From Pocillopora damicornis (Eukaryota), in contig NW_020845558.1 in NCBI RefSeq assembly GCF_003704095.1, positions 806,001-870,000 on the forward strand: a stretch of 64,000 bases of DNA. Reading direction: 5' to 3'. Each line of letters opens with the position of its first letter. Position 1 is the first letter of the stretch. The notes beneath the pieces were generated by a model. It was not told where the DNA came from and did no database searches. It saw nothing but the letters and a program-made list of their open reading frames with translations. This document shows positions 32,797 through 53,635 of this stretch, piece after piece. The translations under genes and the position numbers were made by a program.

Positions 32797-35760
32797 TTAC
32801 TGTCTGACAAGTGAGTAACATACACCTATTCCAACAGCTGCTGCAGCAACACCATATTTCAACCAGGACTCCCAAGAGTTTCTATTGCTCCTTGTGCCAC
32901 TGGCTGGTCTTGACTGTGGACCTTCTTTTCCATCTTTCTCTTCTCTTTCATAATACTTCTTTATGAGACTTTTTGTGTCGTGTATGTCATCCTCGTCTTC
33001 CTCATCAAAGGCAGCCTAAGATTAACAGATAATATTGGGATCAAAATGTAGGATGGATTGTTAAAACCTGGAAACTGGTACAGTCAAGACTAACAACAGA
33101 TGAACCTGTATTAAGCAACACCTTATTAAGCAATGACCTTGTATTAAGCAGTCAGTTGTCAAAGTCCTAAATTTTTCCCCCATAATTACTTCCTAATAAG
33201 TGGGTGACATTGTTCTGAATCCCACAATAAACAGCATGAAAAACTATAAGGTCAAAATAACCTGATAACAACATATGGAAGGTGTTTTCAGTTTTGTACT
33301 CAAAACTAAAATCCACCATTATTGGAAATGAAGTAAAGCCACAGCATTCAGTGGCAGATCCAGACCTTGAGCTAAGGAAGGGGGGGGGGGGGGCTTTTTT
33401 GTTGCTTTCTGCCACTGGTATTGAGATATATGATCTAAGGAGGCCAAAACATTTTCCAGCCAAAGTGAACTGTATTTTGTTAGTAAGTAAGTAAGTAAGA
33501 ACTTTATTTAGAGAGGGTAACACATGACAGTAAAACAGATAAACTAGTGGCCCTCTGTGCTAAAACATCAACCAGGTAATCATAAAACAACTAGGAAGAG
33601 TAAAAAGTAAAAACATTTATTATCTATAGTTAAAAATATATAGAAAAAAATAAGTTAAAAACACAGAGATACCTCAGTCTATAAAGTAACTAAGAATCAT
33701 ACAAAGTATGAACATTAATCCCAAGTCATCTATCATCTAATTTCTCAAAAAAATTCTTTTTTTGCCCCAAAATTCTATTCCTGCTCCTTACCCCCTCCCT
33801 GAGCAGTTTGTACCCTGGCTAATTTTTTCATTCCCCCTCCTACATCAGACCTTAGAGACAGCCTTGTAACTTAAGCCATTTTTTGTTTCCCTTAAGAATT
33901 TGAGTTTGCAAGGATCTACTTTATATTTTTTAGGTACTTACCCATCCTCCCTTCTTTTCTATCCATTCAGCTGTACTCTCTTGTATAAACCTTAAGCTGT
34001 GTTCAGCTAACTGCTCAAGCTGCTTATCATCTAACTCTCCAATAATGGCTATTTCACGAGCAAAATGGCACAATAGTGCAACCTTTGACCAGCCAACAAT
34101 GTGATGATCAAAGGTGAGATGTCTTGCAGCTTTGCAAAATTGTTCGTATGACAGAGATTCTGCTTGAATCATTTTCAAGGGCTCATCTAATAAATTAGGC
34201 ACCATTTCCATAATTTCTTGACTGATCTTGTCCAGTCGTGCAGCAACACGACCCTCGGGAGATAACACAGGAGAAGGAGTGTGGTCACGATCAAAGCAAG
34301 ATTTACATGAAAGCGGTGGAAGCTTAAGCTCATTTGGTCTCTTGTAAAAATCCCTATTCAAACAAACAAGAATGATGTTGATTCCAACCTTTGTTTATAC
34401 CTTATGTTAATACTAATAATAACTTTTTTGAGCCCATAAGTAACAACCAATTGTGTGGCCTCATTGCCTGGTTAGAAAAACACTGATTTTAATAGCAGAG
34501 ATGAGATTGACATTTTAAAAAAACCAAGCAAAAGTCATCATCAGAGACTAGTCAAAATACTTTTTTAATGAAAAATATTTATAAACTTTTTTTAATAAAA
34601 AATTAAAAAGAAATAAATAACTCAAAAAGACTAAATGTTACTAAATATAAAGTGAAGTAAATAAAACAAACATTATTTCCAAATCCATATCTCTTGACTT
34701 GCATCTTAGACACAAGCACAGGGTGAAATGTGACAATAAGACTACCCTGTTTGTCATTATATGTAAATTATCCACTAATTACCAGACATTTTAAAACCAT
34801 AAAGTGCCCAACCGTTTTTATTATCACCCTTAGTGGCGGCTGGTAAGACACGTTTTTTGAAAAAAAGAAGTCAAGAAAAGGAATTCTTATACTAAATGAA
34901 GGCTTGATTAAGTTAAAAGAGGTAGTTTGAAAATCACACTCCTATTCATTCCTCTAAATTAAAATGCAGTGCGTGATTCAGTGGGCTTAGCAATAATTCT
35001 TACTTTCCTTGAAGTTCCGAATGATAGCAGGGGGGTATATCGAACCATTGAACCATTGTAATAGTCTTATAAATGTGGCGATTTTGTGGAGTTTCCTGCA
35101 CTTCAAATACATGGATGCGTCACGATCTGAGATTCACACGTATGAGATTCAGACAGTCGCATTTTACTGTCTTTCCTAATTAATTCACACAGCTGTTCGA
35201 GTTGTGTTTACAAGCGCAAACTATCAGAGAATCTAACCAGGAAACATCTGAACCCCCAAAACGTCATGTTAAAACACCTGAAAATAGTGTACTGCGCAAT
35301 AGACTTGTCATTAAAACGTTCAAACAAAACCGACAACTTACATTTTCTTCTCTGCTCTTCCTCTGAGTTTGTTATGGTCAAATGTTTCAATGTCTCTCTT
35401 CAAGTTCAAGGATAACTTTCGCTGTAGTTTTGCCATTTCCAAAAATTTTTTCCTCTTAGATTCGTAAGCTCCGGCATCGCTAGCACTCTTCGACAGGCCA
35501 ATTATAGCTCTTTTAAGATAAGGTGCCCTGTTCTCAGAATTTGTAAAGTTCCTAGCAGTCAGCCTATCTGCTGGTAACGAACCTAGGTAGTCTAATACTA
35601 CAATTCGAGTTTCCTCCCGAATTCGTTCGAGTGAGGCCCAACGATCAATGTTTGATTTTTCGGGGCCACAGTTTTCCATTTCTTTATCAGAATCTGTATC
35701 CGTAGTAACCTCAGGTGTTCCTTGTGAAATGTATGTTTGTTCTACCGGGTCTTGTTCCAT
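32797..35760 (-). CDS. BCL2L13: Bcl-2-like protein 13 (Bcl-rambo) orthologue, ~349 aa, C-terminal TM anchor
   Basis: Exons 35760-35342, 34353-33942, 33015-32797 in phase. ETRIVVLDYLG (human ETKYVVLSYLG), FDRDHTPSPVLSP (human FDRHTSPVFSP), GWSKV (BH1, human GWNKI), AEWIEKKGGW plus acidic run (BH2), tail anchor WLKYGVAAAAVGIGVCYSLVRQ*. Human sequences quoted from memory. Confidence 0.85.
33480..33556 (-). mobile_element. 3' end of a LINE-like (L2/CR1-type) element
   Basis: Minus strand reads gagggccactagtttatc...gtgttaccctctctaaataaagttc followed by a (ttac)n microsatellite tail. Confidence 0.5.
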
Positions 35761-36793
35761 GATAAAGATATAGAAGAAAGATAGTTCTGGTTGCAATACG
35801 TTATACCATTCTGTAAAAAAATATTGCAAACCGTGGCTGACAGGGAACTGGGTACAAATTCCTCGCGGCCGAGCTGCGCGTGGGCATGACGTTCGCATCG
35901 TGAACTTCCGTCTAAACTTCGCGTCAAAGATTGATTCAGAGGGATTTGTGAAGCAATATATTGCTCTTTTCATGGCCTAGAACATTTATCTCAAGAGCAT
36001 AAGGAGCAATGATTTGGGCTTATGGGAACTTATAGGAGAAAGCCCTCTGTAAATGGTTTTATCTGGAACAATAAAGAGCTGTCAATCGTCATGATCATGG
36101 GGCAATCGATGCTGAGCTCTTGAAACGGTTCTTTCTTTACGCGAGTGAAATTGTTTGACGGTGGTTTTATTCGGTTGAGATAAGGAGCAAATAATGCCAA
36201 GGCCTATAAAAACTTCTATAAAAATTCAGGCTTTTTAAAACTTGTCCCTAAAGCAAACAAACAAACAAGCAACTTGCTCAGGCAATGCCACGTCGCGATT
36301 TTGCTTATTCAGAAATAACATGTGAAAGGCAGATTTCATTCAGGGGAAAGGAAGCGACCTTTTCCTTAGTGCCTCTGCCATCACGATTGAAATTGAAAGC
36401 GAATGGAGGAAATATGGGTTTGACCCCTTCGAGTCACGTGAAATATCCAACACCATAGGCAAACTGCTCTATAGCGATAAAAGCATTTTAAGCGATCAGA
36501 TAATAGCTCTGAGGCTCGAAAAGAGAGGAAGGTTAAAGTTTATTATACGAATATCAAGAGGATGAACACTCGGTAAAGACTGGGCCTGAAATTGGGGGAC
36601 GTGACGAGGCACGATGACGGCATTGTTAAGGGGAAATTGCCGTACACGACGTAAAATTGAGTTTTTCGGGAAAGTCAAAATCTCAGCGGAAAATCGAATT
36701 TCCTGTTTTTCAAAGAATCCTTGAAGACTGCTTTGATCTGCAGAACTTGAACAGATTCAGTAGACCCTTGGTGAGGGAACAAGTGCTTTCGTA
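35761..36793. promoter_or_regulatory. Divergent (~1 kb) promoter region shared by BCL2L13 and the BID-like gene
   Basis: ATGs are 1033 bp apart, head-to-head, and the region is relatively CpG-rich. ISRE-like GAAATTGAAAGCGAAT at 36389-36404, E-box GTCACGTGA at 36433-36441. Confidence 0.55.
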
Positions 36794-53300: not shown

Positions 53301-53635
53301 TTTTTTTCACTACTGGAAATAAAACTAACAATCTCTTGGAAATTTTGTGATCACAGCAAAAATTTACCTTTTCATTCCTGTTTTATTAAGACATAAATTA
53401 CTCAGTCCCAACATCTCTAAAAAATCTGATGAAAATGTCTTTAAAAACATGAAATATAATAAACATGTATATCATATTCCTACCTATAACAATTTAATTA
53501 CCTACAGTGGCTAAGCTACACTTACATTTTCTTCTGCAACTCAACTTGCTTTTCTTTCTTCTCATAAAAAGTCATTATTTTGAGACGCTCCTGCTGTACG
53601 AGGCGACCTTTCTCAATATTGAACTCTTCTTCTGC
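50342..53635 (-). CDS. ATP6V1E1: V-type proton ATPase subunit E (5'-partial; first ~33 codons not in the assembled sequence)
   Basis: Exons 53635-53526, 52838-52772, 52285-52196, 51945-51877, 51391-51297, 50591-50504, 50404-50342 in phase: [47 protein letters not shown]...[13 protein letters not shown]...GGVEL....[13 protein letters not shown]...[13 protein letters not shown]. Confidence 0.95.

What the first reader, a model, noticed from the sequence alone, without database searches (positions are those of the whole stretch)
32797..53635. BCL2L13 - BID-like - SLC25A18/22 - ATP6V1E: same four-gene neighbourhood as human 22q11.21
Seen: four consecutive genes, BCL2L13(-), BID-like(+), glutamate carrier(+), V-ATPase E(-). 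Known: human 22q11.21 has SLC25A18(+), ATP6V1E1(-), BCL2L13(+), BID(-) consecutively. The tail-to-tail carrier/ATPase pair is the same in both, while the Bcl-2 pair is rearranged (head-to-head here, tail-to-tail in human). Inference: this microsynteny dates from the cnidarian-bilaterian ancestor, independently supports the BID assignment, and suggests BID and BCL2L13 arose by local duplication.
Basis: partly seen in the sequence, partly recalled or inferred. Interest (0 to 1): 0.82.

Follow-up and report, generated by a model that had tools for sequence, protein, structure and literature searches.

The report
Ancient BCL2L13–V-ATPase E–carrier gene neighbourhood
A coral keeps a cell-death gene (BCL2L13), a mitochondrial carrier gene and a proton-pump subunit gene side by side as humans and an annelid worm do, and a fourth, undescribed Bcl-2-type gene among them may or may not be the ancestor of human BID.

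Summary
Window 32797-53635 carries four consecutive genes with no assembly gap between them. They are a BCL2L13-like Bcl-2 gene (-), an anchorless Bcl-2-fold gene (+), a short mitochondrial carrier (+) and V-ATPase subunit E (-).

The window matches a 994,089-base Pocillopora damicornis scaffold.

- **BID-like gene model:** RNA contigs from four studies confirm its splice junctions exactly.
- **Carrier / V-ATPase E pair:** it is tail-to-tail in Porites, Nematostella, amphioxus and the annelid Owenia as well.
- **Owenia:** it has Bcl-2 gene (-), V-ATPase E (+), carrier (-), which is the human order and orientation.
- **Conclusion on linkage:** linkage of these three genes probably predates the cnidarian-bilaterian split. 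This is one more case of a known class, conserved ancestral microsynteny.

The BID reading is only positional. The gene belongs to an uncharacterised family that I found only in cnidarians. It sits head-to-head with BCL2L13-like in corals and Nematostella.

Its sequence profile and predicted fold match Bcl-xL, BCL2 and Bak, not BID, and it keeps BH1- and BH2-like motifs. A tree of cnidarian sequences pairs it with BCL2L13-like at moderate support, on long branches.

In Nematostella and Clytia the four-gene block is broken. The first coding exon of V-ATPase E is missing from the window, probably in the N run at 54486-54585.

The parts
32797..35760 (-). BCL2L13-like (Bcl-rambo-like) gene, CDS span. 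Exons 35760-35342 (BH4-type motif and linker), 34353-33942 (BH3, BH1, BH2, ending GGW then gt) and 33015-32797 (acidic linker, membrane anchor, stop at 32799-32797). About 349 aa.
   Evidence: Pfam Bcl-2 E 2.6e-11 on exon 2. Splice sites read from the sequence. Each of the three exons is 74-85% identical to Orbicella XP_020619292 (P0006, 348 aa) and 47-57% to the Nematostella neighbour gene. A member of the Acropora cluster is A. millepora XP_029204183. The Acropora gene was published as AmBclRAMBO (PMC4715348); I did not check that this accession is that gene.
35761..36793 (.). 1,033-base divergent intergenic region between the start codons of the BCL2L13-like and BID-like genes. Probably a shared bidirectional promoter.
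   Evidence: Head-to-head arrangement. RNA contigs of the BID-like mRNA reach upstream of 36600 (table 8). The same head-to-head pairing occurs in Orbicella, a second coral and Nematostella. The promoter function is inferred.
36794..40941 (+). 'BID-like' gene: an anchorless, divergent Bcl-2-fold protein of about 233 aa. Exon 1 is 36794-37025 (helix 1). Exon 2 is 39103-39296 (acidic loop with DEADEDD-LVTD/S, then the BH3-like LALQMQRAGDAL). Exon 3 is 40191-40436 (BH1-like RDRNWTN, ending AGGI then gt). Exon 4 is 40912-40941 (APFVNSKGR, stop). The 3' UTR continues past 41100.
   Evidence: GT..AG junctions at 37025/39103, 39296/40191 and 40436/40912 in RNA contigs. Homologues with E at or below 0.001: 24 in 1.84 billion representatives, one of them a bacterial Tol-system protein. 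All four named full-length ones are cnidarian (Nematostella, Clytia, Hydractinia). AlphaFold model of the Nematostella homologue: helical bundle with core pLDDT 90 or more. Z 13.4 to BCL2 and 13.2 to Bcl-xL. Single copy in this genome.
46100..49152 (+). Short-form mitochondrial carrier, a probable SLC25A18/22 (glutamate carrier) orthologue. Exon-bearing pieces lie near 46100-46239, 46592-46678, 46843-47028, 47236-47475, 47479-47673, 47660-47986, 47990-48097 and 48880-49152. The start codon is not settled.
   Evidence: Pfam Mito_carr on four exons, up to E 1.1e-18. The exons match the carrier gene beside V-ATPase E in Porites, Nematostella, Branchiostoma and Owenia; the last exon is 56-76% identical. 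No other copy of the last exon in this genome at E 1e-5.
50345..53635 (-). V-ATPase subunit E gene, the part encoding residues 34-226. Exons lie near 53635-53525, 52837-52766, 52288-52196, 51948-51877, 51400-51299, 50590-50490 and 50404-50345. It is tail-to-tail with the carrier, about 1.2 kb between the stop codons.
   Evidence: Pfam vATP-synt_E on several exons. tblastn of named V-ATPase E proteins P0122, P0124, P0126 and P0134. The only vATP-synt_E locus found in the genome.
54486..54585 (.). Assembly gap (N run). The missing first coding exon of V-ATPase E (residues 1-33) probably lies in or beside it. I neither filled it nor looked it up.
   Evidence: N run. Residues 1-33 found nowhere in 49000-56000. 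In Nematostella and Porites the second coding exon lies 0.8-1.5 kb below the annotated gene start.

Best explanation
The interval is a surviving piece of an old animal gene neighbourhood.

[quoted passage not shown] They are a BCL2L13-type Bcl-2 gene, V-ATPase subunit E and a short mitochondrial carrier of the SLC25A18/22 type.
- The carrier and V-ATPase E converge tail-to-tail, with little room between their 3' ends.
- BCL2L13 is always transcribed away from a close neighbour. That neighbour is V-ATPase E in the annelid (629 bases between the annotated gene ends). From memory, it is also V-ATPase E in human. In corals and Nematostella it is the BID-like gene.

**Why it survived (inferred).** The most likely reason is what is documented for many conserved ancestral microsyntenic pairs: short shared or interleaved regulatory DNA makes breakpoints costly. 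These are also slowly rearranging genomes.

**The fourth gene.** It is an expressed, spliced member of an undescribed Bcl-2 family branch that I found only in cnidarians. It has helix 1, a long acidic disordered loop, a BH3 helix, BH1- and BH2-like remnants, the family's BH2-splitting intron, and no membrane anchor.

**How it most likely works (inferred).** It is probably a soluble regulator of mitochondrial apoptosis. Its BH3 would be exposed after cleavage or unfolding of the loop, as in Bcl-xL, Bfk or BID.

**Shown:** the gene models, the fold prediction, and the gene orders in eight genomes or assemblies.

**Inferred:** the regulatory constraint, the function of the fourth gene, and any orthology of it to BID.
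For: **Genes and models:**

**Same scaffold and identity of the genome:**

**Carrier / V-ATPase E tail-to-tail:**
- Nematostella L004
- Branchiostoma L005 and L006
- Porites L007
- Owenia L016

**Owenia:** Bcl-2 gene of 606 aa (-), V-ATPase E (+), Mito_carr (-). Its exon 1 carries ETKMVVLNFLGMLP against coral ETRIVVLDYLGSLP (BLASTP E 3e-5). It also has a GGW exon end and a C-terminal anchor.

**Human order:** CECR2, SLC25A18, ATP6V1E1, then BCL2L13, BID, MICAL3 (PMC7862319). This block is conserved in tetrapods (PMC11146322).

**BCL2L13-like / BID-like head-to-head:** Orbicella, Nematostella and a second coral that also shows the carrier next.

**Copy number:** V-ATPase E, the BID-like gene and the carrier's last exon are each single in this genome.

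**Known class and mechanisms:** PMC3514665.

**Coral BCL2L13 orthology in the literature:** PMC4715348.
Against: - The block is not kept everywhere. In Nematostella the two pairs lie on different scaffolds of the first assembly, so at least 319 kb apart.
- In Clytia, V-ATPase E is flanked by trypsin genes and the BID-like gene has no BCL2L13-like exon within reach.
- Amphioxus has no Bcl-2 gene within 10 kb upstream of V-ATPase E.
- Coral and human/annelid orders differ by at least two rearrangements. The ancestor may therefore have had loose linkage rather than strict adjacency.
- The Owenia gene's BCL2L13 identity rests on one short motif, its length and its architecture. Its Bcl-2 domain exons gave no BLASTP alignment to the coral protein and only E 0.008 with a family profile.
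- The carrier's orthology to human SLC25A18/22, and the human strand orientations, rest on my memory, not on a tool result.
- No regulatory constraint was tested.
Confidence: 0.75

Rival explanations
1. The fourth gene is the cnidarian orthologue, or pro-orthologue, of vertebrate BID, perhaps of BID together with BCL2L14 (Bcl-G) and BCL2L15 (Bfk). It kept its place next to BCL2L13. It still looks like a multi-motif Bcl-2 protein because BID lost its BH1 and BH2 motifs later.
For: - It lies directly next to BCL2L13-like in corals and Nematostella, as BID does in human.
- It is anchorless, with a long loop before the BH3 helix. Anthozoan members carry an acidic run followed by (L/M/N)V(T/P)D and then S or C.
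- Protein-language-model features place the Nematostella member nearest Bcl-G (0.93) and BID (0.93 and 0.92) clusters. This is a lead only.
- Pfam BID gives weak hits to two hydrozoan members (E 0.04 and 0.11).
- The tree pairs the family with BCL2L13-like. From memory, BCL2DB's 'BID-like' clade includes Bcl-rambo, which would fit.
Against: - No sequence or fold result singles out BID. The family profile finds Bcl-xL (E 5e-5) and Bak (E 2e-4) in the PDB, and BID is not among the best 60.
- The best fold matches are BCL2 and Bcl-xL (Z about 13), and BID and Bfk are not among the best 50.
- The Pfam BID hits are below the cut-off and weaker than the Bcl-2 hits.
- The gene keeps NW(T/S)N and GG/FV motifs that BID lacks.
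- Its orientation relative to BCL2L13 differs from human.
- BID has not been found before jawed vertebrates, and not in lamprey or hagfish (PMC8998228).
- No bilaterian invertebrate member was found in 1.84 billion representatives.
- Caspase-cleavable loops also occur in Bcl-2 and Bcl-xL (my own knowledge).
Confidence: 0.3
2. The fourth gene is a cnidarian invention. It is a local or dispersed duplicate of a Bcl-2 family gene that lost its anchor in the cnidarian stem lineage. Its resemblance to BID in position and build is convergence.
For: - Apart from one bacterial hit, the homologues found are cnidarian or of unknown source.
- Sequence and fold are canonical Bcl-2 / Bcl-xL / Bak-like.
- The family profile hits the coral Bak gene, 160 kb away on the same scaffold, better than it hits BCL2L13-like (E 4e-4 against 0.12).
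- Tandem duplicates of Bcl-2 genes are common. The orientation differs from human BCL2L13/BID.
Against: - A second Bcl-2-fold, anchorless, BH3-bearing gene sits directly beside BCL2L13 in both cnidarians and vertebrates, inside a block shown to be ancient. That is an unlikely coincidence if the two are unrelated.
- The pair is at least as old as the coral-anemone split, and the family as old as Anthozoa plus Hydrozoa.
Confidence: 0.45
3. The four-gene neighbourhood is a chance arrangement or an assembly artefact with no evolutionary meaning.
For: - Gene order is generally scrambled over such distances.
- The block is broken in Nematostella and Clytia.
- The scaffold has gaps just outside the interval.
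Against: - There is no gap inside the interval.
- An independent coral assembly gives the same order.
- The pairs recur in Porites, Orbicella, Nematostella, amphioxus, Owenia and human.
- The genes are single-copy.
Confidence: 0.03

Closest known systems
Human 22q11.21 'cat-eye' block: CECR2, SLC25A18, ATP6V1E1, BCL2L13, BID, MICAL3
   Same: The same three secure gene families are direct neighbours. The carrier and V-ATPase E are tail-to-tail. A second Bcl-2-fold, anchorless, BH3-bearing gene lies next to BCL2L13 (human strands from memory).
   Different: In coral, BCL2L13 is separated from V-ATPase E by the BID-like gene and the carrier. BCL2L13 is head-to-head with the BID-like gene, not with V-ATPase E. 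No MICAL-type (bMERB) match lies on this scaffold. The other flanking genes differ: RING-NHL, WH1 and TEAD on one side, a GPCR on the other.
Conserved ancestral microsyntenic pairs (Irimia et al. 2012, PMC3514665)
   Same: Unrelated genes kept adjacent across more than 600 million years. Divergent 5'-5' pairs with short intergenic DNA are enriched in that class. Here the divergent pairs are 1,033 bases apart in coral and 629 in Owenia.
   Different: I could not check whether these pairs are in that study's list, because its supplement is not held. The tail-to-tail pair is not the typical orientation. No co-expression or regulatory test was done.
AmBclRAMBO of Acropora millepora (Moya et al. 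2016, PMC4715348)
   Same: The coral Bcl-rambo/BCL2L13 orthologue is published with BH1-3 motifs, an anchor and mitochondrial localisation, and it clusters with vertebrate Bcl2L13. The window's gene is 58% identical over exon 1 to P0017, the representative of the cluster that holds the Acropora proteins.
   Different: That paper reports no genomic context and no neighbouring anchorless Bcl-2 gene. I did not verify that its transcript equals the Acropora accession found here.
BID, Bfk (BCL2L15) and Bcl-G (BCL2L14): soluble Bcl-2-fold proteins activated by loop cleavage
   Same: No membrane anchor, a Bcl-2 helical bundle, a BH3 helix after a flexible loop, and BH2 retained as in Bfk and Bcl-G (PMC8814693). 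Language-model features are nearest to Bcl-G and BID clusters.
   Different: It keeps a clear BH1-like NW(T/S)N motif. The best sequence and fold matches are Bcl-xL, BCL2 and Bak. No cleavage or activity data exist.

Membership tests
BCL2L13 (Bcl-rambo) | Bcl-2 domain with BH3, BH1 and BH2 | tested here: met
   Pfam PF00452 E 2.6e-11, over the cut-off, on exon 2. Bax, Bak and Bok are the nearest solved sequences.
BCL2L13 (Bcl-rambo) | C-terminal membrane anchor with a short tail, preceded by a Glu/Ser-rich non-BH (BHNo) linker (PMC9800997) | tested here: inconclusive
   The anchor WLKYGVAAAAVGIGVCYSLV plus RQ is present, after an acidic linker of about 48 aa. The linker is far shorter than the human one. 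No LIR motif was sought.
BCL2L13 (Bcl-rambo) | Groups with vertebrate BCL2L13 in a phylogeny | not tested
This grouping is published for the Acropora gene. The N-terminal motif is shared with the Owenia gene that occupies the human BCL2L13 position.
BID | Soluble Bcl-2-like helical bundle without a membrane anchor | tested here: met
   The CDS ends 9 residues after the BH2 intron. The model of the Nematostella member is a helical bundle with Z 13 to BCL2 and Bcl-xL.
BID | BH3 is the only BH motif (no BH1 or BH2) | tested here: not met
   G-x-D-R-x-W and GG/FV motifs are conserved across the family. They align to BH1 and BH2 of Bcl-xL.
BID | Recognised by the BID family model, or closest to BID among solved proteins | tested here: not met
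   Pfam PF06393 gives only E 0.04 and 0.11 for two hydrozoan members, below the cut-off, and nothing for the other five scanned, anthozoan ones included. BID is absent from the best 60 sequence hits and the best 50 fold hits.
BID | Activating caspase cleavage in the loop before BH3 | not testable with these tools
   Candidate sites are LVTD/S in the window, MVPD/S in P0029 and NVPD/C in Nematostella. The loop is predicted disordered.
BID | Direct neighbour of BCL2L13 | tested here: met
   Window, Orbicella, a second coral and Nematostella. Head-to-head here, tail-to-tail in human (human strands from memory).
SLC25A18/SLC25A22 glutamate carriers | About 300-330 aa carrier with three Mito_carr repeats and no N-terminal EF-hand domain | tested here: met
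   Mito_carr hits on exons across the gene. The orthologous annotated models are 303 aa (Nematostella), 328 aa (Branchiostoma) and 308 aa (Owenia). The four largest ORFs in the 5 kb upstream have no Pfam hit.
SLC25A18/SLC25A22 glutamate carriers | Sequence orthology to human GC1/GC2 | not tested
   The PDB holds no close relative. The atlas returned only generic carrier clusters. The resemblance to human GC1 is from memory. Positional orthology beside ATP6V1E is met.
V-ATPase subunit E | Match to vATP-synt_E and to named subunit E proteins over the whole length | tested here: met
   Pfam hits. Exons cover residues 34-226 of named proteins at 87-97% identity per exon to P0122 and P0134 over residues 34-177; the last alignment runs across an intron. 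Only locus in the genome. Residues 1-33 are missing from the assembly.
Conserved ancestral microsyntenic block | Unrelated genes adjacent in several deeply diverged animal lineages | tested here: met
   Carrier / V-ATPase E in corals, Nematostella, amphioxus, annelid and human. Bcl-2 gene / V-ATPase E in annelid and human, and within four genes in corals.
Conserved ancestral microsyntenic block | Regulatory constraint (shared promoter, co-expression, or enhancers in the neighbour) | not tested
   Only the short divergent intergenic distances are seen: 1,033 bases here and 629 in Owenia.

The most novel reading that the evidence does not exclude
The anchorless Bcl-2-fold gene next to BCL2L13 in cnidarians is the single pre-vertebrate ancestor of BID, and possibly also of Bcl-G (BCL2L14) and Bfk (BCL2L15). 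From memory, those two sit on human chromosome arms paralogous to 22q11 and 11p15. BID would then date from before the cnidarian-bilaterian split rather than from jawed vertebrates. It would have begun as a multi-motif Bcl-2 protein born beside BCL2L13, with its BH1 and BH2 motifs lost later.
Probability: 0.3. Interest if true: 0.75.

Novelty: new member of a known kind. Interest (0 to 1): 0.55.

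Why it matters
**Genome evolution.** This adds a three-gene block (BCL2L13, V-ATPase E, SLC25A18/22-type carrier) to the short list of neighbourhoods of unrelated genes that survive from cnidarians to humans. An annelid keeps the human arrangement exactly.

**Cell-death research.**
- The block gives a positional anchor for BCL2L13 orthologues, whose sequences are hard to recognise.
- It points to an undescribed branch of the Bcl-2 family across Cnidaria. Family-model surveys missed it: Pfam Bcl-2 stays below its cut-off on every member tested.
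- It turns the origin of BID into a testable question. BID is so far traced only to jawed vertebrates. The test is to look at the gene next to BCL2L13 in bilaterian invertebrates and jawless fish.

Tried and rejected
**Searches that found nothing.**
- Exon 3 of the BID-like gene has no Pfam or PDB hit by itself.
- Searching the coral genome with the Owenia Bcl-2 exons found nothing, because the first-look filter is too coarse for this divergence.
- BLASTP of the coral Bcl-2 exon against the Owenia BH3 and BH2 exons gave no alignment.

**Look-ups with nothing on record.**
- The Montipora V-ATPase E protein and a Hydractinia BID-like isoform are not on record as called genes.
- The Montipora-like loci L011 and L012 do not reach the carrier within 10 kb, so they are uninformative.
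- The supplement of Irimia et al. and the Footz et al. 2001 paper are not held.

**Identities ruled out or left open.**
- The amphioxus gene upstream of V-ATPase E is an acidic coiled-coil protein, not BCL2L13.
- The atlas search on the carrier's last exon returned only generic carrier clusters, and the PDB has no close carrier. The glutamate-carrier identity therefore stays untested by tools.
- Hydra HyBH3-only-2 was considered as a known name for the family. Its BH3 peptide and its position in the protein differ.
- A MICAL-type (bMERB) match was sought on the scaffold to extend the human block and was not found there.

Each exon was searched by reference. For folding and profiles I used database proteins of other cnidarians instead.
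- The N runs were not filled or looked up.

Full report
**What is in the window**

The window is G000:C2193:806001-870000, on a contig of 994,089 bases in a 234-Mb assembly of 4,393 contigs. A Pocillopora damicornis protein, pdam_00002790 (P0134), is recorded on a contig of exactly that length. Its V-ATPase E exons match the window at 91-97% per tblastn alignment. The genome is therefore almost certainly P. damicornis.

N runs lie only at 31405-31503 and 54486-54585. The interval 32797-53635 is gap-free.

**Gene 1: BCL2L13-like, minus strand**

- I read three exons from the sequence: 35760-35342, 34353-33942 and 33015-32797.
- Exon 2 carries a Bcl-2 domain (Pfam E 2.6e-11) and ends with GGW followed by gt. 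This is the BH2-splitting intron typical of the family (own knowledge).
- Exon 3 encodes an acidic linker and a hydrophobic anchor.
- Full-length relatives of 340-364 aa exist in Orbicella, Acropora and Montipora, all named 'uncharacterized'.
- Moya et al. 2016 described the Acropora millepora member as AmBclRAMBO. It localises to mitochondria and clusters with vertebrate Bcl2L13 (PMC4715348).
- I could not add vertebrate sequences myself. The orthology therefore rests on that paper and on position (see the gene-order section).

**Gene 2: 'BID-like', plus strand**

- My model has four exons: 36794-37025, 39103-39296, 40191-40436 and 40912-40941.
- RNA contigs from four runs of four studies show GT..AG junctions at 37025/39103 and 39296/40191. 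Two runs show 40436/40912. Exon depth is far above intron depth. The gene is real, spliced and expressed.

The protein, about 233 aa, reads as follows:
- an N-terminal helix;
- an acidic loop (DEADEDD-LVTD/S);
- a BH3-like LALQMQRAGDAL;
- a BH1-like RDRNWTN;
- AGGI followed by gt, at the family's BH2 intron position;
- a 9-residue tail (APFVNSKGR), with no membrane anchor.

An exhaustive HMMER search with exon 3 against 1.84 billion representatives gave only 24 hits, one of them a bacterial Tol-system protein. The named full-length hits are 'uncharacterized' proteins of Nematostella (XP_001628884), Clytia and Hydractinia. The family therefore spans Anthozoa and Hydrozoa and has not been described.

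Hydra's HyBH3-only-2 does not appear to be the same protein.

**Is gene 2 BID?**

*By sequence, no.*
- A profile of 13 family members finds Bcl-xL (E 5e-5, aligned from BH3 through BH1 to GGW-DTFVE) and Bak (E 2e-4) among solved proteins. BID is not in the best 60. A hydrozoan member alone gives the same picture.
- Pfam Bcl-2 hits four of the seven members scanned at E 6e-4 to 0.2. Pfam BID hits two hydrozoan members at E 0.04 and 0.11. All are below the cut-offs.

*By fold, no.*
- The AlphaFold model of the Nematostella member has a confident helical bundle and a disordered loop at residues 49-119.
- Its best matches are BCL2 (Z 13.4, rmsd 2.8, 130 residues aligned), Bcl-xL (Z 13.2), Bak and Bok. 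BID and Bfk are not in the best 50.

*What favours BID.*
- Position, absence of an anchor, and the loop-then-BH3 layout.
- A language-model feature search whose nearest clusters are Bcl-G and BID (0.93). That result is a lead only.
- An ML tree of cnidarian Bcl-2 cores (105 columns, LG+G4) makes the family sister to BCL2L13-like, with SH-aLRT 74.6 and UFBoot 83. Both are long branches, so attraction cannot be excluded.
- Against that tree, the family profile scores the coral Bak gene better than BCL2L13-like.
- BCL2DB recognises a 'BID-like' clade of cellular Bcl-2 homologues (PMC3945527). From memory it includes Bcl-rambo, Bcl-G and Bfk, which would fit a shared origin.
- Banjara et al. find BID only from cartilaginous fish onward (PMC8998228).

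**Genes 3 and 4**

*Carrier.*
- The carrier's exons between 46100 and 49152 hit Mito_carr.
- Its start codon is unclear.

*V-ATPase E.*
- Its exons run from 53635 down to 50345 and cover residues 34-226 of named V-ATPase E proteins.
- Residues 1-33 are not in the window.
- The database model P0134 replaces them with 62 unrelated residues taken from 55090-54905, beyond the N run.
- The true first coding exon probably lies in or beside the gap. I did not fill it or look it up.
- V-ATPase E is the only such locus in the genome.

*Copy number of the other two.* The BID-like exon and the carrier's last exon are also unique in the genome.

**Gene order elsewhere**

| Genome or assembly | What was found |
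|---|---|
| Orbicella | BID-like (228 aa model, no Pfam) head-to-head with BCL2L13-like, followed by the same RING and WH1 genes as in the window |
| Second coral (ENA contig of 707 kb) | BCL2L13-like exon 1 (-), BID-like exons 1-3 (+), carrier exons 1-2 (+) |
| Porites lobata | V-ATPase E (+) and carrier (-) tail-to-tail; the 571-aa carrier model is probably a fusion with an upstream gene |
| Nematostella | BCL2L13-like (362 aa) head-to-head with the BID-like gene; V-ATPase E tail-to-tail with a 303-aa carrier. The pairs lie on different scaffolds of the first assembly, with at least 319 kb of scaffold on either side of V-ATPase E |
| Clytia | Neither pair |
| Branchiostoma floridae (two assemblies) | V-ATPase E (+) tail-to-tail with a 328-aa carrier (-); the upstream genes are a methyltransferase and an acidic coiled-coil protein, not Bcl-2 |
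| Owenia fusiformis | A 606-aa Bcl-2-domain gene (-), 629 bases away V-ATPase E (+), then a 308-aa carrier (-) |

Details on the Owenia Bcl-2 gene:
- It has ETKMVVLNFLGMLP near its N-terminus, against ETRIVVLDYLGSLP in the coral (BLASTP E 3e-5).
- It has an exon ending INQGGW and a C-terminal anchor.
- Its Bcl-2 exons are otherwise too diverged for BLASTP.

The human order is CECR2, SLC25A18, ATP6V1E1, then BCL2L13, BID, MICAL3 (PMC7862319). This 'cat-eye' block is known to be conserved in tetrapods (PMC11146322). With the human strands from memory (+, -, +, -), Owenia has the human arrangement of the three genes. Corals have a rearranged one.

**Reading**

- The carrier / V-ATPase E pair is shown in corals, a sea anemone, a cephalochordate, an annelid and human. 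It is an ancestral pair.
- Linkage of BCL2L13 to that pair occurs in human, annelid and corals. This is best explained by linkage in the cnidarian-bilaterian ancestor, with later local rearrangement in corals or in bilaterians, and loss of linkage in Nematostella, Clytia and probably amphioxus.
- This is the class described by Irimia et al. 2012, who found nearly 600 such pairs. Many are divergent with short intergenic DNA and appear to be held by shared regulation (PMC3514665).
- The short divergent spacers here fit that mechanism, but I did not test it.
- The BID question stays open. I put about 0.3 on orthology or pro-orthology to BID. I put about 0.45 on a cnidarian-specific duplicate. The rest goes to other histories.

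**Limits**

Those comparisons rest on the literature or on memory and are marked as such.
- The context look-up reaches only 10 kb on each side, so 'not adjacent' means 'not within 10 kb'.

Noticed in passing
window 53636-55144, N run at 54486-54585: The first coding exon of V-ATPase E (residues 1-33) is absent from the assembled sequence. The public P. damicornis model pdam_00002790 (255 aa) instead starts with 62 unrelated residues from an ORF at 55090-54905, beyond the gap. This is a probable mis-annotation caused by the gap.
   Followed up: partly
G000:C2193:678300-680300 (L020) and G000:C2193:597000-599000 (L021): Two further Bcl-2 family genes lie on the same scaffold, about 160 kb and 240 kb from the BCL2L13-like gene. 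L020 is a clear Bak orthologue (E 2e-36 to human BAK). From memory, human TEAD paralogues lie close to BAX, BAK1 and BCL2L14, so this scaffold may preserve a larger ancestral linkage of TEAD with Bcl-2 family genes.
   Followed up: partly
window 39469-39770 (intron 2 of the BID-like gene): A repeat attracts many unrelated RNA contigs with loose ends and variable small deletions in all four runs. It is probably a transcribed short interspersed element.
   Followed up: no
window 4648-6433, 15797-16255, 20568-21287, 24337-25209, 29243-30904: Genes to the left of BCL2L13-like: TEAD (TEA domain exons), a histidine-phosphatase gene, two WH1-domain genes and a single-exon RING-NHL gene of 554 aa. Orbicella has the RING gene and a WH1 gene in the same order downstream of its BCL2L13-like gene.
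   Followed up: partly
L007:20142-28298 (Porites lobata): The annotated carrier model has 571 aa and runs past the carrier's first exon at 23521. It is probably a fusion with the next upstream gene on the same strand, which in Pocillopora would be the BID-like gene. No BID-like exon lies within the 4.8 kb that is visible.
   Followed up: partly
L014 and L015 (Clytia hemisphaerica): V-ATPase E occurs on two scaffolds with the same neighbours (a Laminin_G/pentraxin gene and trypsin genes). These are probably uncollapsed haplotypes or a recent segmental duplication.
   Followed up: no
L016:4501-5611 (Owenia, intron of the Bcl-2 gene): A tandemly repeated ORF fragment (MSPMMCLFPVLFQVMGMPRENVTYDVF...) copies the start of the exon that carries the BH1 region. 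Either exon-derived repeats lie inside the intron or the assembly stutters there.
   Followed up: no
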